63,991 nt of DNA, filler included, from Octopus bimaculoides (GCF_001194135.2; 8 parts of 8 records of this genome joined end to end with filler, not necessarily neighbours in it); one strand, 5' to 3'; positions 361 through 14,729 are shown, counted from the first letter of the whole stretch. Translations and numbers: made by a program. Notes: generated from the sequence alone by a model not told the origin.

Positions 361-1598
361 TTAGATCATCCCATAAATAATGCGGTCATTTATACATCAT
401 TTATTTTTCAAACAAGATAAACAACGTTATTTTTAGTCTAAAATATACACACGTTCATTTTCTACAATGTTCTTCCTACTATCTGGTAGACGTGCAAGGC
501 TGCTCATTCAAAATCCCCTTGTCCGTCACGGAAAACACTTCTCTAGTACTAACCTCGTCTCGAGAATTCATATATCTTCCATCCAAATGAAGATTACGGA
601 ACAAATCATAATCAGATAGTGTATTGTTTCGCGAATATGGTAAGTGGGGCATCATTTCCCATTCAAACTGCCCCAGCCTTTGGGACATCATTTTTGATAT
701 ATATGGCCTGATGGAAGAACACATTTCGTCTTGAAATTAAAAATGATCATTTTCTTTCTAGCACTGAGTTAAGCCGCTGAAGCTGCCCGTAGTAGTAGAC
801 CTTTTTTTATCGTTTGGTTCGGGCCCAAAGTGAAGTAAGACATTCATATCCCAACAAACGCCTTACGTGTGTGAAAACCATCTCTCGCCTAGATGCCGGT
901 GTTTCTCCTTTCCTATCCACTGTCTTCGGCACTTGAAATTTTTATAGAGAATTCATTTATCATCAACTGTCAATATCTTGTCTATAAAATGTTCATTTGT
1001 GAAAGGTAATGGCAAAGAAGCGCAGTAATTTACCCCCTTCGCGCGATTAAAACTCGGGAAGTTTGTGAGAGACAGAGTCACCTGATTAGCTCATTGTGTC
1101 GATGGCACATAGGTGTCTATGAATGGTTGAATGACCAAATCCAAGCTTCTCTGCTAGTCCCTCGACAGTTACGAAGGGATTTTGTTCCACAAGTGTTTCG
1201 TAGGACGTTCTCGTCGAGCTCTAGAGATCTTCCACAATGAGGCTCGTCTTCTGGGCTATAATTTCCGGCTCTGAATTTCTGAAAAACACCGTTGACACTT
1301 GCTTACGATTATTGTCCGATCCCCATATACTACATTAATATTCCACGCACTTTCCATTGCGTTGTTACATTTATTGAACTCATTACGAAAAATATAACGA
1401 ATATCCTATTTTGTCACTTCTATTAAAGCTTTCAAAAAATACCGTTAAAGTCGAACTGCACTCTACAAAACTTGCACTAAGAATATGTATATGATAAAAT
1501 TACTACCTTCTTTTAATCGCAAGCTCATGCAGTTCGTGTGTCCCTTCCCCTTCCGACTTCTAGTTCATGGAAACTGCATTATGTATGGGATGACTCAA
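361..1598 (-). mobile_element. Full-length decayed mariner (Tc1/mariner) DNA transposon, 1238 bp
   Basis: 26-bp TIRs TTAGATCATCCCATAAATAATGCGGT (361-386) and the reverse complement of 1573-1598 TTGAGTCATCCCATACATAATGCAGT match at 21/26. TA flanks both ends (359-360, 1599-1600). Minus-strand translation gives broken transposase motifs: VYGDRT, GNYSPEDEPHCGR, NPFVTVEGLAEKLGFGHSTIHRHL, IDKILTVDDK*ILY, WEMMPHLPYSRNNTLSDYDLFRNL (cf. HPPYSPDLAPSDYHLF). Multiple stops and frameshifts. Confidence 0.9.
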
Positions 1599-2178
1599 TA
1601 TATATATATATATATATATATATANNNNNNNNNNNNNNNNNNNNNNNNNNNNNNNNNNNNNNNNNNNNNNNNNNNNNNNNNNNNNNNNNNNNNNNNNNNN
1701 NNNNNNNNNNNNNNNNNNNNNNNNNNNNNNNNNNNNNNNNNNNNNNNNNNNNNNNNNNNNNNNNNNNNNNNNNNNNNNNNNNNNNNNNNNNNNNNNNNNN
1801 NNNNNNNNNNNNNNNNNNNNNNNNNNNNNNNNNNNNNNNNNNNNNNNNNNNNNNNNNNNNNNNNNNNNNNNNNNNNNNNNNNNNNNNNNNNNNNNNNNNN
1901 NNNNNNNNNNNNNNNNNNNNNNNNNNNNNNNNNNNNNNNNNNNNNNNNNNNNNNNNNNNNNNNNNNNNNNNNNNNNNNNNNNNNNNNNNNNNNNNNNNNN
2001 NNNNNNNNNNNNNNNNNNNNNNNNNNNNNNNNNNNNNNNNNNNNNNNNNNNNNNNNNNNNNNNNNNNNNNNNNNNNNNNNNNNNNNNNNNNNNNNNNNNN
2101 NNNNNNNNNNNNNNNNNNNNNNNNNNNNNNNNNNNNNNNNNNNNNNNNNNNNNNNNNNNNNNNNNNNNNNNNNNNNNA

Positions 2179-4362: not shown

Positions 4363-5479
4363 CTGTAAAAGAATAAAATATAAAATATCAGGCACTCCAT
4401 AATTATTTCATTCCTTTTTCAGATTCTATGAAGGACAAAGATTGCTCCCTGTTTCATGCGATGAATTTATNNNNNNNNNNNNNNNNNNNNNNNNNNNNNN
4501 NNNNNNNNNNNNNNNNNNNNNNNNNNNNNNNNNNNNNNNNNNNNNNNNNNNNNNNNNNNNNNNNNNNNNNNNNNNNNNNNNNNNNNNNNNNNNNNNNNNN
4601 NNNNNNNNNNNNNNNNNNNNNNNNNNNNNNNNNNNNNNNNNNNNNNNNNNNNNNNNNNNNNNNNNNNNNNNNNNNNNNNNNNNNNNNNNNNNNNNNNNNN
4701 NNNNNNNNAGCTGCTGCTGACGATCGTTGAGTTTATTTATTTATTTTATTGTCTCGGCTATTTTCCACCTTTTTTTCACATCTACCTATTTACGGTCAGG
4801 AAATTATAATATTAGGTCTCCGATGAAATAACAGCAGCTGTTCAATAGAGATAGCTAAAAATTGGTGGCATAGACAACTTGAAAGATAAAGTTACAGAAT
4901 AGCACCACCAACCGTGGAAATGGTATGTTAAAACATAAAATCAGACAAATTTGTATTTGCTTTTAATAACAAGAAAATAACAATAACAACTAATTATAAT
5001 ACATTGAAAACATTAATGACAGAAACAATTTAAAATATTTTGTTTAAAAAAATGAACAATAAGTTCTAATACGTCGTAAAACATTAACGGAAAACAATTA
5101 AAAACAAATTATATTCGATTGATTAAGCTTTTAGAGATATATTGAGTGAAATATCAGTGACAATGAAACCAACAATAAGTGGGGGGGGATGTTACAAAAA
5201 TAATTTGGCTACCCATTAATTCATTCCTCAAAAGGAATGAATTAATGCATAAAAACAAGTTATTATAGATTTCGTTTTATTTTTCAAAAGCATTATTGAG
5301 TTAACTTATTGATGTAGCGCAGGAAGAAATAAGACATTCATTATAAATAAGGATAGCCAACTTATTTTTTTGTACATTCCGTTATTTTTGGTTTAATTTT
5401 CATTGATGTGTTCCTTGCATGACCCTACAGAGTTCCAAAGTGACCCTCATCTCGCCAAAATTGATTTAGACCAATCTCT

Positions 5480-6649: not shown

Positions 6650-6703
6650 GTCTGTCTATCTATCTCTCTATCTATCTATCAATATATATATATNNNNNNN
6701 NNN

Positions 6704-7574: not shown

Positions 7575-8075
7575 GTCTTGGGCAAGTGTCTTCTACTATA
7601 GCCTTGGGCCGACCAAAGCCTTGTGAGTGGATTTGGTAGTGGATTTGAAAGAAGCCCGTCGTATATATGTATATAGGATTAATGTAATGTAATATAAAGC
7701 TGAAGCAAAATAACACCAAATATATAGTGCGTGTGTTTTTATTGGCTAAACTGGCAATATGACCATCCCCAAGTACAACAATATAAATATATATATATAT
7801 ATATACATACATATATATATAAAGCGTGAATGGATTTCGTGGACGGAATCTGAAAGAAGCCCATCATATAGGTATGTGTGTTAAGTGCTTTACCCCCTCA
7901 CCACAGCTTGACAACCGGTGTAGGTGTGTTTACGCATCCGTAACTTTGTCGTTTGAGATAAGAGACCGATACAATGATAGCAGGCTTAACAAAACAAATA
8001 ACAAATGCTAGATTCGATAAACTTGATTAAAATTCTTCAAAGTGGTGCCCAGCATGGCTGAAACATGTAAACAAT
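7575..8075 (+). repeat. SINE family A copy interrupted by AT-rich simple sequence
   Basis: GGCAAGTGTCTTCTACTATAGCC..GGGCCGACCAAAGCCTTGTGAGTGGATTTGGTAG core is shared with 14292, 40421 and minus-strand copies. The 3' part (GAGACCGAT...GGTGCCCAGCATGGC) resumes near 7890. Confidence 0.75.
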
Positions 8076-9893: not shown

Positions 9894-10083
9894 CTAAATC
9901 AGAATATAGGAGTTAATGTGTGATCACTGCTGAAGTTGTACTCCACATTCTTTACAAGTGGTGTTGCCACATTCAAAGACCATGTTTCAACGTAACTCCA
10001 GAAATACTGTACATGTGGTTGTTCTTTGAGCTGCTGGTACTTGGACACCAAAGATGAATCTATGGTATTGACTTGGGGCCCAT
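9894..10083 (-). pseudogene. Decayed terminal exon encoding coiled-coil plus Mind-bomb-type RING finger of the ankyrin gene
   Basis: Acceptor tttactatttcag|AT at 10083 is phase 1, matching the donor at 11318. Reads (Y)GPQVNTIDSSLVSKYQQLKEQ, then after a 1-nt shift TCTVFLELR*NMVFECGNTTCKECGVQLQQ*SHINSYILI*. This follows the MIB1/MIB2 C-terminal RING pattern (KEQTMCPVCLDRLKNMIFxCGHGTCQLCGDRMSECPIC...RILLY), with C>F, H>N, C>stop and one further stop. Confidence 0.8.
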
Positions 10084-11317
10084 CTGAAATAGTAAATATA
10101 GAATTCTATGTCTGTACATTTTATTAGAGATATCAGAATCAGAAAACAGTTAAGAAATATTCAGAATCAGGAAACAGTTAAGAAATATTCTCTAGAAAAG
10201 AATTTAACATTCTTTCTTTACCAAATTTCTTGAAGACTGTCTTTTGTTCTATCTTATGTAATCTGTTTTTAATAATTTTAATTCAAATTTAAATTTGAAC
10301 TTTCCATCTTAATTAGATGCAAGAACCTTTTGTAAAGTCATTTTACTAAATCACTCCAAATTCTTGATTATTTGCGAAATTATTTAACACACAGAGGTAT
10401 TTTTAAAAGTAGTAATATGTTACGAAAAATGAAATGGTTAAAATGGGTTAAATAAAAGTGTGTGTTTATGTATTAACTTTATTTACACGTATATGTTGTG
10501 GACCTCTTTTCCTCTTAAATATAGATTTCCATCTTAGATATTCAAATATAACTCACTGTATCTACAGTAAAATTTTAAAATGTCAACATTTCAGAATATG
10601 GTTAGATGATTCACATTTTATAACCTCACTAATCCTTTAATTAACAACTCATTAATTATCAAAAGTGTTCAGTAAAATCCACAAAAATGGACACATCCAT
10701 AAATCAATAGCTAACATTTTCATATAAAAACTATATTTGTAAACAATAAATGTTTACGTGTACATAACAATTAGTTAATTTGATATAATGGTTCCTTAAT
10801 CAATTTTAATGTATTATTATATAAATGGTTGAGTATTCCACAGACATTTATATCCTGATGCAATATNNNNNNNNNNNNNNNNNNNNNNNNNNNNNNNNNN
10901 NNNNNNNNNNNNNNNNNNNNNNNNNNNNNNNNNNNNNNNNNNNNNNNNNNNNNNNNNNNNNNNNNNNNNNNNNNNNNNNNNNNNNNNNNNNNNNNNNNNN
11001 NNNNNNNNNNNNNNNNAAAGAGACAAAACTAAAAATCGTATGGTAATCATTCTGTATTTACTACAAGGGTCAAAGAAAGGGGTATTTTACGCGAAATGTA
11101 ATGTTTTACATGAACTGAATGAAGTGAAAGAATTTGAACCCATAACACTGAGGTAATAGGTGAGATGAAGTAAAGAATCTACTCAGATACAACAACATGC
11201 TGTAAAAGATAGTCTCACAGCAACCCATGGTGGGATTGTGCAGATAACGACTCAATAAAACTACATTGAAAAGATGAATGAAAATGATTTGGATATTGTA
11301 GATTATTGCTGACTTAC

Positions 11318-11463
11318 AGTAGAAAAGGTAATGCAGAGATGTGGTAATACGATTATCCACGACATTGACTTCAGCTTTTGACAACAAGAGCACTTTCACA
11401 TCGCCTGTGCTTTCCCAACTCATGCCGGATATATATGTGCGACACCATCTTTATTCGCCACAT
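11318..11463 (-). pseudogene. Frameshifted, eroded 21st ankyrin repeat with intact splice donor
   Basis: Restoring one base at TAC AAA CTG AAG TAA gives YK(A)EVNVANKDG. Another frame continues GDVKVLLLSKAEVNVVDNRITTSLHYLFY and ends T|gtaagt (donor at 11317-11312). Confidence 0.75.
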
Positions 11464-13635
11464 TTACTTCAGTTTGTATAGTAGGAGCTGCTTCATCACG
11501 TCTATGTCTCCATTACTACTAGCCAGATATAGAGGTGTCTTACCATCTTTATTCATCGCATCTGTATCAGCGTTAGAGAGTAATAGCTGCTTTACCATGT
11601 CTGTGTGTCCCTGAGCACTGGCTAGATGTAGGGGCGTGTTACCAGCTTTATCCACCGCACTTACATCAGATTTAGAGAGCAATAACTGCTTCACCATGTC
11701 CATGTGTCCACCAAGGCAGGCCAGATGTAAAGGTGTGTTACCATCTTTATCTACAACACTTACATCAGCTTTAGAGAGTAGTAGTTGCTTCACTATGTCT
11801 GTGAGTCCATGAACACATGTCAAATGTAGGGGTGTGTTACCATCTTTATTCGCCACATTGACGGCACCTTTATTTAGTAGGAGCTCCTTCAAGATATCTA
11901 TGTGTCCACGATCACATGCCAAATGTAGCGGTGTGTTACCATCTTTATTCGTGGTATTTACATCAGACTCAAACAAGATTAGCTGTTTCACCATGTCTGT
12001 ATGTCCCCTACGGCACGCTAGAAGCAGAGGTGTGTTACCATCTTTATTCTCCACATTGACAGTAGCTTTAGCTAGTAGGAGCTCCTTCAAGATATCTGCG
12101 TGTCCATGACCACAAGCCACATGTAGAGTTGTGTTGCCATGTTTATTCGCTACATTTACATCAGGATTAAACAGCAGAAGTTGTTTTACCATGTCTACTT
12201 GTCCGTGAACACAGAGCAGAAGTAGGGGCGTGTTACCATCTTTATTCACTACATTCATATCAGGGTCAAACAGTAGTAGGTCTTTCAGTATGTCTCTGTG
12301 TCCACAACGACAAACCAGATGTAATGGTGTGTTACCATCTTTATCTTCCACATTAACATCAGATTTAGAGAATAGGAGGTGCTTAGCTATGTTTGCGTGT
12401 CCATGACCACAGGCCAAATGTAGAGGTGTGTTACCATCTCTATTCACCACATTTACATCAAGTTCAAACTGTAATAGCTGTTTCACTATGTCCGTGTATC
12501 CATCAGGACAAGCCAGGTGTAGCGGTGTGTTACCATCATTATTCAGTACATTTACATCAGGTTCAAGCAGGAGTATCTGCTTCACCATGTCTGTCTGTCC
12601 ACGAACACAGGCCAGATGTAGTGGTGTGTTACCATCAATATTCGCCAAATTTATATTAGGTTTAGATAACAGTAGCTGTTTCACCATGTCTGTCTGTCCA
12701 CGAATACAGGCCAAATGTAGCGGTGTATTACTATCATTATTCACCAAATTTATATTGGGTTTAAATGACAGTAGCTGCTTCACCGTGTCTGCATGTCCAC
12801 GACCACACGCCAGATGTAGAGATGTGTTACCATCACTATTCACTAGATTTATGTCAGATTTAGAGAGCAGTAGCTGTTTTACTGTGTCTGTGTACCCACC
12901 ACGACAGGCCAAGTGGAGAGGTATATTACCATCTCTATCTGTCACATTTACATCAGGTTCAGACGTTAATAGCACTTCAACATCTGTGTGTCCACCAGAG
13001 CAAAACCAATGCAGGGGTGTGTAACCATATTTATCCTCCATATTTATATCAGGTTTAAAAAGTAGTAGCTGTTTAATTAGGCCTGTACTTCCATTAATAC
13101 ACGCCAAATGCAGAGGTGTGTGTTTGTACTTATTCACCAAGTCGACATGAGGCTCTTTTAGTTCTTCCTCATCGTCAGTAATTTTACCACTGTCGAACTG
13201 ATCCGGAGATATTTTCCCACTTTCTTTCAATACAGGATCTTTAGATTTGGATTGTGATTGTTTTTCACCAATGTCTCTGCTTTCATCACTATTGAGCAAA
13301 TTCAGAGTTTTTTTCCATTTATTTTTCACCACAGGAACTCTTGGATTGGACTGTAGTAGTATCTTAGCAGCGTCTTTGTGTTCATTAATACAGGCCAGAT
13401 GTAGGGGTGTGTTCCCATAACTATTCACTACCGTGACATCAGGTTTAGTAACTAGGAGATGTTCGATAACACCAATGCGTCCCCAACGGCAGGCCACATG
13501 TAGAGGAGTGTTACGACCTTTGTCTACCACATTAATATCGGGTTTAAACATTAACATCTTCTTCACTAGGCTCGTGTTCCCAACACTACAGGCCACATGG
13601 AGAGGTGTGTTACCGTGTTTGTCAGGTATAGTGAT
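11464..13635 (-). CDS. Main exon of an ankyrin-repeat protein (20 repeats, 723 codons)
   Basis: Acceptor ttctttctttttcag|ATC at 13635 (phase 0) extends the ORF to ITIPDKHGNTPLHVAC. There are 20 GxTPLHLAC..GH.D.VK.LL repeats at about 99-bp spacing, with a roughly 60-aa non-repeat insert after repeat 3. Stop TAA at 11464-11466. Confidence 0.95.
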   Translation of the reverse strand: MTIPDKHGNTPLHVACSVGNTSLVKKMLMFKPDINVVDKGRNTPLHVACRWGRIGVIEHLLVTKPDVTVVNSYGNTPLHLACINEHKDAAKILLQSNPRVPVVKNKWKKTLNLLNSDESRDIGEKQSQSKSKDPVLKESGKISPDQFDSGKITDDEEELKEPHVDLVNKYKHTPLHLACINGSTGLIKQLLLFKPDINMEDKYGYTPLHWFCSGGHTDVEVLLTSEPDVNVTDRDGNIPLHLACRGGYTDTVKQLLLSKSDINLVNSDGNTSLHLACGRGHADTVKQLLSFKPNINLVNNDSNTPLHLACIRGQTDMVKQLLLSKPNINLANIDGNTPLHLACVRGQTDMVKQILLLEPDVNVLNNDGNTPLHLACPDGYTDIVKQLLQFELDVNVVNRDGNTPLHLACGHGHANIAKHLLFSKSDVNVEDKDGNTPLHLVCRCGHRDILKDLLLFDPDMNVVNKDGNTPLLLLCVHGQVDMVKQLLLFNPDVNVANKHGNTTLHVACGHGHADILKELLLAKATVNVENKDGNTPLLLACRRGHTDMVKQLILFESDVNTTNKDGNTPLHLACDRGHIDILKELLLNKGAVNVANKDGNTPLHLTCVHGLTDIVKQLLLSKADVSVVDKDGNTPLHLACLGGHMDMVKQLLLSKSDVSAVDKAGNTPLHLASAQGHTDMVKQLLLSNADTDAMNKDGKTPLYLASSNGDIDVMKQLLLYKLK

Positions 13636-13808
13636 CTGAAAAAGAAAGAAGACATATTACAAATAATGTCTAGATAGGGTGGTACAAGAACAGAAAGAGA
13701 AAAAGTGAATCAAAGTCATAAACAGGAGTAATGATGATAGTGAGGGAGAAATAGTGAAAAGGTGAGGTTTATATTGTAATTATGCTTAAAAAGGAGCACC
13801 TACATCCG

Positions 13809-13848
<40 letters not shown>

Positions 13849-14291
13849 NNNNNNNNNNNNNNNNNNNNNNNNNNNNNNNNNNNNNNNNNNNNNNNNNNNN
13901 NNNNNNNNNNNNNNNNNNNNNNNNNNNNNNNNNNNNNNNNNNNNNNNNNNNNNNNNNNNNNNNNNNNNNNNNNNNNNNNNNNNNNNNNNNNNNNNNNNNN
14001 NNNNNNNNNNNNNNNNNNNNNNNNNNNNNNNNNNNNNNNNNNNNNNNNNNNNNNNNNNNNNNNNNNNNNNNNNNNNNNNNNNNNNNNNNNNNNNNNNNNN
14101 NNNNNNNNNNNNNNNNNNNNNNNNNNNNNNNNNNNNNNNNNNNNNNNNNNNNNNNNNNNNNNNNNNNNNNNNNNNNNNNNNNNNNNNNNNNNNNNNNNNN
14201 NNNNNNNNNNNNNNNNNNNNNNNNNNNNNNNNNNNNNNNNNNNNNNNNNNNNNNNNNNNNNNNNNNNNNNNNNNNNNNNNNNNNNNNNNNN

Positions 14292-14610
14292 CAAGTGTCT
14301 TCTACTATAGCCTCGGGCCGACCAAAGCCTTGTGAGTGGATTTGGTAGACGGAAACTGAAAGAAGCCTGTCGTATATATGTATATATATATATGTATGTG
14401 TGTTTGTGTGTCTGTGTTTGTCCCCCCACCATCTCTTGACAACCGATGCTGGTGTGTTTACGTCCCCGTAACTTAGCGGTTCGGCAAAAAGAGACCGATA
14501 GAATAAGTACTAGGCTTCTAAAGAATAAGTCCTGGGGTCGATTTGTTCGACTAAAAGCGGTGCTCCAGCATGGCCGCAGTCAAATAACTGAAACAAGTTA
14601 AAGAGTAGAA
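14292..14610 (+). repeat. SINE family A copy (5' part lost in gap) in ankyrin gene intron
   Basis: Near-identical to 40421-40795: CAAGTGTCTTCTACTATAGCC...GGTGCTCCAGCATGGCCGCAGTCAAAT. Confidence 0.85.
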
Positions 14611-14645
14611 TAAAGTCTGAAAAGACAATGTGGAGAGTAGCTTAC

Positions 14646-14729
14646 TTTATCTGGGTTCCTTTTTAGAATTTCGTTAACATAGTCAGTGTCCATTTGCATA
14701 ATTCTCTGCGTAATCAAATCAATTGCCAT
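14646..14729 (-). CDS. Start-codon exon of the ankyrin gene (MAIDLITQRIMQMDTDYVNEILKRNPDK)
   Basis: Strong acceptor at 14748, an in-frame TAA upstream of caacATGG (14729), 28 codons, and phase-0 donor AAA|gtaagc. The join to 13635 gives VNEILKRNPDK-ITIPDKHGNTPLH, which completes an ankyrin-like cap. Full protein 751 aa. Confidence 0.85.

What the first reader, a model, noticed from the sequence alone, without database searches (positions are those of the whole stretch)
9894..14729. Ankyrin gene appears to be a former ANK-RING E3 ligase that lost its RING but kept a long intact ANK ORF
Seen: the 751-aa ORF has clean splice signals but ends at a 1-nt frameshift in repeat 20/21. Past the stop are an eroded repeat, a GTAAGT donor (phase 1) and, 1.2 kb on, a phase-1 acceptor exon encoding a coiled coil plus a Mind-bomb-like RING with at least five lesions (frameshift, two stops, C>F, H>N). 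Known: MIB1/MIB2 are ankyrin+RING E3 ligases whose substrate-binding MZM/REP modules lie N-terminal. Here an in-frame stop upstream of the ATG excludes those modules, so the ancestor was a cap+ANK(20+)+RING protein. Inference: heavy decay confined to the catalytic exon, while 723 codons stay open, suggests selection for a ligase-dead ankyrin scaffold or decoy derived from a lineage-specific ANK-RING family.
Basis: partly seen in the sequence, partly recalled or inferred. Interest (0 to 1): 0.82.

Follow-up and report, generated by a model that had tools for sequence, protein, structure and literature searches.

The report
Ankyrin gene with dead RING exon
An intact 751-residue ankyrin-repeat gene still carries, just past its stop codon, the decayed last exon of a Mind-bomb-type ubiquitin ligase, so it is most likely a former ligase that lost its catalytic module but kept its repeat scaffold; this is a tidy but not surprising case of domain loss.

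Summary
On the minus strand, a 28-codon ATG exon (14729-14646) joins a 723-codon exon (13635-11464) to give a 751-aa protein with 20 ankyrin repeats. A 1-nt deletion at 11472/11473 creates the TAA stop. Downstream lie an eroded repeat 21 (TGA in place of Cys, second 1-nt deletion), a phase-1 GTAAGT donor (11317) and a phase-1 acceptor exon (10083-9894). That exon's frame-joined, unrepaired translation hits the MIB1 coiled-coil/RING3 structure best (E=8e-7). An intact homologous exon in another genome (L001) has the same acceptor and phase, and it pins the lesions: a 1-nt deletion, Cys2>Phe, Trp>stop, His>Asn, a broken Cys7 codon, lost Cys8 and an early stop. Both N gaps lie in introns of this model. 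All six frame-breaking lesions sit in the last 340 of 2593 nt (P about 5e-6), and the repeats are old (dS 0.73, dN/dS 0.36). The ankyrin part therefore looks maintained while the catalytic part decayed. Not shown: expression, any orthologue or ANK-RING paralogue, the source organism, the claim that the ancestor lacked MZM/REP, or a decoy function. Verdict: a real feature, a truncated derivative of a Mind-bomb-like E3, of moderate interest.

The parts
14646..14729 (-). Exon 1: ATG (14729-14727), 28 codons encoding the N-terminal cap of the ankyrin domain. Donor is AAA|GTAAGC, phase 0. An in-frame TAA lies 9 nt upstream of the ATG, and an acceptor-like ttccttttcag lies 19 nt upstream.
13636..14645 (-). 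Intron 1. It contains the N gap 13849-14291 and a SINE-like interspersed repeat (14292-14640).
   Evidence: The exon 1 and exon 2 junction rebuilds one continuous ankyrin period, so a hidden coding exon is unlikely.
11464..13635 (-). Exon 2: 723 open codons plus TAA. It encodes 3 ankyrin repeats, a 64-aa degenerate linker and 17 repeats of 33 aa (one of 32 aa; the last cut short after its second helix).
   Evidence: (99-nt period)
13153..13344 (-). K/E/S-rich linker (residues 126-189). It derives from two ankyrin units that lost the motif but stayed in frame.
   Evidence: alignment score 13 versus -39 +/- 6.7 for 500 codon shuffles
11464..11475 (-). First frameshift: one C missing at 11472/11473, in the loop that follows helix 2 of repeat 20. 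It brings TAA (11466-11464) into frame.
11318..11463 (-). Relic 3' end of the ankyrin exon. It holds the rest of repeat 20, repeat 21 (11446-11349) with TGA at 11422-11420 in place of Cys and a second 1-nt deletion at 11398/11399, and the part-repeat ITTSLHYLFY.
   Evidence: (pN 0.37 versus 0.14 in intact repeats, Fisher P=4e-6)
11312..11317 (-). GTAAGT donor of the former last intron, phase 1 in the ancestral frame.
10084..11311 (-). Former last intron. It contains the N gap 10867-11016. No coding relic was detected in the readable part.
9894..10083 (-). Relic coiled-coil + RING3-type exon with a phase-1 acceptor ctatttcag|AT. Lesions: 1-nt deletion near 10017-10019; Cys2>Phe TTT at 10004-10002; TGA at 9989-9987 (TGG in L001); His>Asn AAC at 9965-9963; TGA at 9926-9924 (1-nt insertion in TGT CAC, or Cys7>stop); Cys8 lost; shortened end with TAG at 9896-9894.

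Best explanation
This is a two-exon gene for a 751-residue, cytosolic ankyrin-repeat protein. It descends from a Mind-bomb-like E3 ubiquitin ligase gene in which a long ankyrin exon was spliced (phase 1) to a last exon encoding a coiled coil plus a RING3-type RING finger.

The catalytic exon and the last 1.5 ankyrin repeats have since been disabled and are decaying. A 1-nt deletion now ends the protein just after the second helix of repeat 20.

Shown: the gene structure, the homology of the relic exon, the list of lesions, and their confinement to the 3' end.

Inferred: the ankyrin part has stayed under selection for an open frame and so still makes a protein. That protein could bind partners through its ankyrin groove but could not recruit an E2 or dimerise through ccRING3. 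It would then act as a non-catalytic binder, either a scaffold or a competitor of RING-bearing relatives. This last step is speculation.
For: - **Gene model and repeats:**
- **Relic exon is MIB RING3-type:**
  - The unrepaired peptide hits 8v0d_B (UbcH5B-MIB1 RING3) at E=8e-7, followed by BIRC7/3/2 RINGs.
  - It is 54% identical over 39 aa to an intact exon (P0309 / L001 10229-10345), including CG[H/N]TTCKECG.
  - The DNA alignment shows an identical acceptor CTATTTCAG|ATGG and the same phase.
- **Phase compatibility:** the frame-corrected ankyrin tail ends in a phase-1 GTAAGT donor that matches the phase-1 acceptor.
- **Architecture has precedent:** MIB-like proteins with ankyrin repeats followed directly by a single ccRING3 exist (P0302/L005, P0360).
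- **Constraint on the ankyrin part:**
  - Six frame-breaking lesions all fall in the last 340 of 2593 nt, P=(340/2593)^6=5e-6. At the relic's lesion density, 33-40 would be expected in the ORF.
  - Repeats differ by 28% at the DNA level, with dS 0.73, dN 0.27 and a ratio of 0.36. They are therefore old and evolved under purifying selection, not recently homogenised.
  - Relic repeat 21 has pN 0.37 against 0.14 in intact repeats (P=4e-6).
  - Framework positions (G1 N2 T3 P4 L5 H6 L7 A8 C9 G12 D15 K18 L20 L21) are almost invariant, while positions 10, 11, 14, 25 and 30 vary.
  - A strongly diverged two-unit stretch stayed in frame.
- **Loss of RING3 means loss of ligase activity:** in MIB1, ubiquitin transfer relies solely on RING3 and ccRING3 drives dimerisation (PMC10925295).
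Against: - There is no evidence of transcription or translation.
- No orthologue or close paralogue was found, so dN/dS across species could not be computed. The dN/dS among repeats reflects the whole history, not only the time since RING loss.
- The stop lies 146 nt upstream of a still consensus GTAAGT donor. If that intron is still spliced, the transcript could be a target of nonsense-mediated decay.
- The ORF is absent from the 15-billion-protein collection, so nobody has annotated or called it there.
- The two closest loci found with this RING3-type exon (L001, L002) each have another RING exon just upstream and no ankyrin array within 10 kb. The direct ANK-to-RING3 junction is therefore inferred from splice phase, not seen intact in a close relative.
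- Gene conversion of the ankyrin exon from an unseen intact paralogue could also keep it open.
Confidence: 0.62

Rival explanations
1. The whole locus is a dead pseudogene. The ankyrin ORF is open only by chance or because the gene died recently, and it makes no functional protein.
For: There is no expression evidence, no annotated or called protein identical or close to it, and no orthologue. The stop lies upstream of an intact donor. The 3' part of the gene is clearly decaying.
Against: Six frame-breaking lesions are all confined to the last 13% of the coding sequence (P about 5e-6). With the excess divergence seen in relic repeat 21 (about 0.2 per site), a neutral 751-codon ORF would stay open with P below 1e-4 even ignoring indels. 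Framework residues are intact in all 20 repeats. A highly diverged internal stretch stayed in frame.
Confidence: 0.2
2. The ankyrin exon is kept open not by selection on this gene but by recent gene conversion or duplication from an intact ANK-RING paralogue. That copy was pasted onto an older dead locus, so the 3' relic is much older than the ankyrin exon.
For: There is a sharp boundary between intact sequence and decayed sequence within repeats 20-21. Synonymous divergence of relic repeat 21 from the consensus (0.53) exceeds that of intact repeats (0.29; P=0.03). That is unexpected if both had the same neutral history.
Against: No paralogue was found in the window or in any searched collection. 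Repeats within the array are 28% diverged with no sign of homogenisation. Terminal capping repeats are commonly atypical, which could explain the higher divergence.
Confidence: 0.1
3. The gene is still an active ligase or has another 3' end. One route is that the lesions are assembly or sequencing errors. The other is that a donor upstream of the frameshift (for example GGTAAG at 11544, phase 1) splices to an intact exon hidden in a gap or beyond the window.
For: This is a draft assembly with five N gaps in 18 kb, one of them (10867-11016) inside the relevant intron. The phase-1 GGTAAG is unique to repeat 20.
Against: At least nine independent lesions are present, including substitutions at four zinc ligands. 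None lies in a long homopolymer or close to a gap edge. No intact RING motif exists in any frame of the readable 18 kb.
Confidence: 0.05
4. The ankyrin gene and the RING relic are unrelated neighbours. The relic would be the last exon of an older Mind-bomb-like gene whose other exons are gone.
For: In L001 and L002 the homologous exon is preceded by another RING exon, not by ankyrin repeats. The ankyrin array is no closer to MIB ankyrin domains (25-35% identity) than to ankyrin-1 or other generic arrays.
Against: Both parts share strand and order and lie 1.2 kb apart. A phase-1 donor at the end of the decayed ankyrin tail matches the phase-1 acceptor. Decay runs continuously from repeat 20 through the RING exon. 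No MZM, REP or RING1/2 relic occurs anywhere in the window. MIB-like proteins with ANK directly followed by one ccRING3 exist.
Confidence: 0.05

Closest known systems
Mind bomb E3 ligases MIB1 / MIB2 (ccRING3 module)
   Same: The relic exon aligns best to the coiled-coil + RING3 of MIB1: VN..L...Q.KEQT.C.V.L...NM.F.CG..TC..CG. The module is C-terminal and lies downstream of ankyrin repeats. In MIB1 it is the only catalytically required RING and it is the dimerisation element (PMC10925295).
   Different: There is no MZM (MIB_HERC2/ZZ) or REP (SH3_15) in the ORF or anywhere in the window, and no RING1/RING2. It has 20-22 consensus-like ankyrin repeats in one exon, against about 9 in MIB. The RING is dead.
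MIB-like proteins with a single C-terminal RING (unnamed; P0302/L005 from SRR31023092, P0360)
   Same: Ankyrin repeats are followed, after a linker, directly by one ccRING3-type RING, which is the architecture inferred for the ancestor.
   Different: They carry REP (SH3_15) domains N-terminal to the ankyrin repeats and only about 6-9 repeats. Ankyrin identity to the window protein is about 28-30%.
Intact RING3-type exon in ENA assembly ERZ21867824, contig ctg122245l (L001 10151-10393; P0309)
   Same: It is the closest relative of the relic exon found. The acceptor CTATTTCAG|ATGG and the phase are the same. Identity is 54% aa over 39 aa across the RING core.
   Different: It is intact (all eight ligands, ends KKILLY*). 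It is preceded 3 kb upstream by another RING exon, with no ankyrin repeats within 10 kb. It shares no nucleotide similarity or interspersed repeat with the window, so it comes from a different lineage.
Long consensus-type ankyrin solenoids (ankyrin-1 membrane-binding domain, NOMPC, ANKRD28/44/52 PP6 regulatory subunits)
   Same: These are the best matches of the ORF by sequence: ankyrin-1 at E=7e-151 in the PDB, and PP6 regulatory ankyrin subunits at 25-30% identity over more than 90% of the query. All are non-catalytic protein-binding scaffolds.
   Different: The similarity is generic repeat similarity (at most 40% identity). The N-terminus, linker and relic RING are not shared.
RING-deleted Mind bomb variants (experimental)
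   Same: Removal of RING3 abolishes ligase activity, and in flies it gives dominant-negative behaviour (as summarised in PMC10925295). This is a precedent for a RING-less derivative acting as an antagonist.
   Different: Those variants keep the MZM/REP substrate-binding region, which this protein lacks. Here the truncation is natural and its effect is untested.

Membership tests
Ankyrin-repeat proteins (Pfam Ank / Ank_2) | Tandem 33-residue repeats with the TPLH motif and a helix-turn-helix framework, scoring above the Pfam thresholds | tested here: met
   PF00023 at E=9e-155 with 20 stretches; PF12796 at E=2e-171. The 99-nt period is confirmed.
Mind bomb family (MIB1/MIB2) | N-terminal MZM module (MIB_HERC2 - ZZ - MIB_HERC2) | tested here: not met
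   No Pfam hit in the ORF. tblastn with nine MIB proteins found nothing outside the ANK and RING regions in 18 kb, even at E<5. Exons beyond the window cannot be excluded for the ancestor. The present ORF cannot extend upstream, because an in-frame TAA lies 9 nt before the ATG.
Mind bomb family (MIB1/MIB2) | REP (Mind bomb SH3 repeat, PF18346) domains | tested here: not met
Mind bomb family (MIB1/MIB2) | Central ankyrin-repeat domain | tested here: met
   However, the array is no closer to MIB ankyrin domains (25-35% identity) than to generic ankyrin proteins.
Mind bomb family (MIB1/MIB2) | C-terminal coiled coil + RING3-type zf-C3HC4_3 RING | tested here: inconclusive
   It is present only as a decayed relic outside the ORF. 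Homology is significant (E=8e-7 to MIB1 RING3; intact homologous exon), but the domain is not encoded by the present gene.
RING-type E3 ubiquitin ligases (zf-C3HC4_3, PF13920) | Eight intact zinc ligands (C3HC4) in one open reading frame, scoring above Pfam's gathering threshold | tested here: not met
   Ligands 2, 4, 7 and 8 are destroyed, and there are two stops and a frameshift. PF13920 scores 12.9 bits against a threshold of 27 on the unrepaired peptide.
Unitary pseudogene (entire gene neutral) | Disabling lesions scattered over the whole former coding sequence | tested here: not met
   0 lesions in 2253 nt of ORF against 6 in the last 340 nt, P about 5e-6.

The most novel reading that the evidence does not exclude
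A lineage-specific family of ligases made of a long ankyrin array plus ccRING3, without MZM/REP, exists in this animal's lineage. This locus would be a member that was converted by a frameshift into a RING-less, monomeric ankyrin solenoid. It would be retained by selection because it competes with its ligase paralogues for the same substrates, making it a naturally evolved dominant-negative or decoy regulator.
Probability: 0.15. Interest if true: 0.55.

Novelty: new variant of a known kind. Interest (0 to 1): 0.35.

Why it matters
If the ankyrin protein is expressed, this locus records an enzyme turning into a non-catalytic binder. The discarded catalytic exon is still readable next to it, so both the ancestry and the order of events can be reconstructed from one sequence. 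Such cases help explain where RING-less, ligase-like regulators come from. They also give annotators a concrete warning: the gene should be called as an ankyrin protein ending at 11464, not merged with or 'repaired' into a ligase. Beyond that it is one locus in an unidentified draft genome, with no comparative or expression data, and domain loss by frameshift is a familiar process.

Tried and rejected
- **Full ORF search** against 5.8 billion proteins: only generic ankyrin proteins at 25-40% identity, none with a RING. The result list is dominated by long repeat proteins.
- **Exact look-ups** of the 751-, 723-, 710- and 697-aa products: none is in the collection.
- **RING-exon peptide as a word-index query**: no candidates.
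- **Profile of the peptide, two repaired variants and human MIB1 RING3**: it returned only short last-exon fragments of MIB1 orthologues.
- **Exhaustive HMMER profile search**: 4110 hits, of which only the top 150 can be seen, mostly MIB1/MIB2. It did yield P0309/L001 and the single-RING MIB-like proteins.
- **L002-L004 (P0361)** are another MIB-like gene with no ankyrin repeats within 10 kb.
- **Metagenome scan with the ORF**: one generic 40% hit.
- **Weak second 'RING' hit at 1259-1369**: rejected, because it is a decayed mariner-like transposase HTH.
- **AlphaFold single-sequence model** of the exon-2 product: mean pLDDT 41, uninformative.
- **Rfam and tRNA scans**: nothing.
- **Literature searches**: nothing specific on molluscan or cephalopod ANK-RING expansions, and no match to the SINE-like sequence.
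- **Pfam on a hand-repaired RING** (protein 3) passes the threshold, but this is circular and was not used as evidence.

Full report
**1. What is in the sequence**

The feature lies on the minus strand.

- **Exon 1.** An ATG at 14729-14727 has a good context (aacaacATGG) and an in-frame TAA 9 nt upstream. It opens a 28-codon exon that ends AAA|GTAAGC at 14646/14645.
- **Exon 2.** After an intron of about 1 kb, a strong acceptor (ttctttctttttcag|ATC) at 13635 opens a 723-codon exon that runs to TAA at 11466-11464.
- **Product.** The spliced product is 751 aa. Pfam finds 20 ankyrin repeats and nothing else (PF00023 E=9e-155).
- **Layout.** The protein is an N-terminal cap, three repeats, a 64-residue K/E/S-rich stretch, then 17 repeats of 33 residues (one of 32; the last cut short). 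At the DNA level this is a 99-nt period.

**2. The assembly gaps**

The gap at 13849-14291 lies inside intron 1. The gap at 10867-11016 lies inside what used to be the last intron. Neither interrupts coding sequence in this model, so frame continuity across them does not arise.

For the first gap, the end of exon 1 and the start of exon 2 together rebuild a single ankyrin period. Compare ...TDYVNEILKRNPDK|ITIPDKHGNTPLH with the consensus ...TDMVKQLLLSKPDV|NVVNKDGNTPLH. The two exons therefore belong together, and a missing coding exon is unlikely.

For the second gap, a small hidden exon cannot be excluded.

**3. The 3' end of the ankyrin exon**

Each unit was aligned to the consensus 99-nt repeat.

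- **Repeat 20** lacks one C at 11472/11473 (AAA-CTGAAG against AAACCTGATG). That shifts the frame and gives the TAA. The protein therefore ends ...DVMKQLLLYKLK, just after the second helix of repeat 20.
- **Repeat 21** (11446-11349), read in the shifted frame, is GVAHIYPA*VGKAQAM. It has the same length as GNTPLHLACxxGHxDM, with TGA (11422-11420) where all intact repeats have Cys.
- **A second 1-nt deletion** (ATG-TGAAAG, 11398/11399) leads into VKVLLLSKAEVNVVDNR and a part-repeat ITTSLHYLFY.
- **The exon then ends** T|GTAAGT at 11318/11317, which is phase 1 in the ancestral frame.
- **Divergence.** Repeat 21 differs from the consensus at 39 of 98 positions, against 12-23 for intact units. Its non-synonymous divergence is 0.37 against 0.14 (Fisher P=4e-6).

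**4. The RING exon**

At 10083 an acceptor (ctatttcag|AT) opens a phase-1 exon. It reads (Y)GPQVNTIDSSLVSKYQQLKEQ, then after a 1-nt deletion near 10017-10019, TCTVFLELR*NMVFECGNTTCKECGVQLQQ*SHINSYILI*.

- **Pfam.** The frame-joined but otherwise unrepaired peptide gives only sub-threshold hits to four RING models (E 0.03-0.1).
- **PDB.** Against all PDB sequences its best hit is the UbcH5B-MIB1 RING3 fusion 8v0d_B (E=8e-7), aligned through both coiled coil and RING. The BIRC7, BIRC3 and BIRC2 RINGs follow.
- **Exhaustive profile search.** Searching 1.84 billion representatives gave one relative that is closer than MIB1: P0309. Its locus L001 (ENA ERZ21867824) holds an intact exon ...DGSQFKH...KLQELEEQYMCSICMERHWNMAFVCGHTTCKECGDVLKQCHMCRKPIQKKILLY*.
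- **DNA alignment.** It shows an identical acceptor, CTATTTCAG|ATGG, the same phase, and clear nucleotide similarity across the RING core.

That alignment also fixes the lesions in the window:

| Lesion | Position |
|---|---|
| 1-nt deletion before Cys1 | near 10017-10019 |
| Cys2 TGC>TTT (Phe) | 10004-10002 |
| TGG>TGA (stop) | 9989-9987 |
| His CAT>AAC (Asn) | 9965-9963 |
| TGT CAC > TGA TCA C (1-nt insertion rather than a simple nonsense change) | 9926-9924 |
| Cys8 lost | - |
| Shortened end, TAG | 9896-9894 |

No other ankyrin or RING coding sequence exists in the readable 18 kb. A weak second 'RING' hit at 1259-1369 is a decayed mariner-like transposase.

**5. Are the two parts one former gene?**

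The evidence says yes:

- They have the same strand and order and lie 1.2 kb apart.
- The donor and acceptor are both phase 1.
- Decay runs continuously from repeat 20 to the end of the RING exon.
- No relic of MZM, REP or RING1/2 is present that would point to a separate Mind-bomb gene.

One caveat applies. In L001, and in a second MIB-like gene (L002-L004), the RING3-type exon is preceded by another RING exon rather than by ankyrin repeats. However, MIB-like proteins in which ankyrin repeats are followed directly by a single ccRING3 do exist (P0302/L005 and P0360). Those proteins carry REP domains upstream.

The stop describes only today's gene, and only 3.4 kb upstream of the ATG is in the window.

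**6. Is the ankyrin part maintained?**

- **Placement of lesions.** Six frame-breaking lesions (three 1-nt deletions, two in-frame TGA stops, and a third TGA that is a 1-nt insertion or a nonsense change) all fall in the last 340 of the 2593 nt of ancestral coding sequence. If the whole gene were neutral, the chance of that placement is (340/2593)^6 = 5e-6. At the relic's lesion density, 33-40 lesions would be expected in the ORF.
- **Age of the repeats.** They are not recently homogenised. Pairwise DNA identity is 72%, with dS 0.73, dN 0.27 and a ratio of 0.36.
- **Framework residues.** Positions G1 N2 T3 P4 L5 H6 L7 A8 C9 G12 D15 K18 L20 L21 are almost invariant, while positions 10, 11, 14, 25 and 30 vary. 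This is the usual pattern of a working ankyrin solenoid.
- **The 64-residue 'linker'.** At the DNA level it aligns to two consensus units (score 13 against -39 +/- 6.7 for 500 codon shuffles). So two repeats lost their motif yet stayed in frame.

Together these favour selection for an open ankyrin frame. They do not prove expression. The dN/dS among repeats covers the whole history of the array, not just the period since RING loss.

Three points count against the idea or remain open:

- The stop lies 146 nt upstream of an intact GTAAGT donor, which may expose the transcript to nonsense-mediated decay.
- No identical or close protein exists in any searched collection.
- Gene conversion from an unseen paralogue is possible.

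**7. Mechanism**

In MIB1, ubiquitin transfer depends solely on RING3, and the coiled coil plus RING3 drives dimerisation. A single Cys-to-Ser change in RING3 kills activity. RING-deleted Mind bomb behaves as a dominant negative in flies (PMC10925295).

The module lost here is exactly that one. The present protein, if made, cannot be a ligase of this type and has lost the ccRING3 dimerisation element. What remains is a 3 + 17-repeat ankyrin solenoid, whose closest solved relatives are ankyrin-1 and NOMPC. A non-catalytic binder, either a scaffold or a competitor of RING-bearing relatives, is the natural reading. It is inference only.

**8. Comparison and novelty**

The relic is a member of the MIB RING3-type RING group by homology. 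The gene fails the defining MIB features (no MZM, no REP, no intact RING) and should not be filed as MIB1 or MIB2. It is best described as a truncated derivative of a Mind-bomb-like ankyrin-ccRING3 gene with an unusually long, consensus-like ankyrin array.

Domain loss by frameshift with a readable relic is a known kind of event, and this is a new variant of it. The source organism could not be determined. The sequence is AT-rich with canonical GT-AG introns, many microsatellites, a SINE-like repeat and a mariner relic, so it is from an animal.

**9. Verdict**

Interest is moderate to low (0.35).

Noticed in passing
window 13153-13344 (-): The 64-residue K/E/S-rich 'linker' between ankyrin repeats 3 and 4 aligns at the DNA level to two consensus 99-nt ankyrin units. 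It appears to be two repeats that degenerated into a probably disordered segment while staying in frame.
   Followed up: yes
window 14292-14640, about 2640-2990 and about 7640-7990: There are three copies (about 77-79% identical over 65-131 nt) of a SINE-like interspersed repeat. Each sits next to a microsatellite or an N gap, and one sits in intron 1 of the gene. There is no tRNA or Rfam match, and no match in the paper library.
   Followed up: partly
window about 1100-1400 (-): This is a decayed mariner-like transposase N-terminus (HTH region ...VEQNPFVTVEGLAEKLGFGHSTIHRHL...) split over several frames. It produced a spurious weak RING-like hit.
   Followed up: partly
window 11539-11544 (-): Repeat 20 alone starts GGT AAG instead of GGT AAC. 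That creates a donor-like G|GTAAGA in phase 1, upstream of the frameshift and compatible with the phase-1 acceptor at 10083. Its use is unknown.
   Followed up: no
window 11450-11455 (-): An AATAAA lies 9 nt after the TAA stop and could end transcripts before the old donor. The same hexamer occurs 8 times inside the coding sequence (Asn-Lys codons), so it is not distinctive.
   Followed up: partly
window 11834-13024 (+): Long antisense ORFs (91-198 aa) run across the ankyrin array. They are by-products of the repeat unit lacking stops on the opposite strand, not genes.
   Followed up: no
L001 10001-10591 and 6970-7377: The ENA gene call P0309 reads TGA as Trp, so its 66-residue C-terminal extension is an artefact. 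The real exon ends KKILLY* at 10393. A second RING exon (RING1/2 type) lies 3 kb upstream, so L001 carries a multi-RING Mind-bomb-like gene.
   Followed up: partly
window 1625-2177, 4471-4708, 6694-6703, 10867-11016, 13849-14291: All N gaps that were inspected are flanked by (TA)n, (CA)n or similar microsatellites. This is typical of short-read scaffolds breaking at simple repeats. Gap lengths are estimates only.
   Followed up: no
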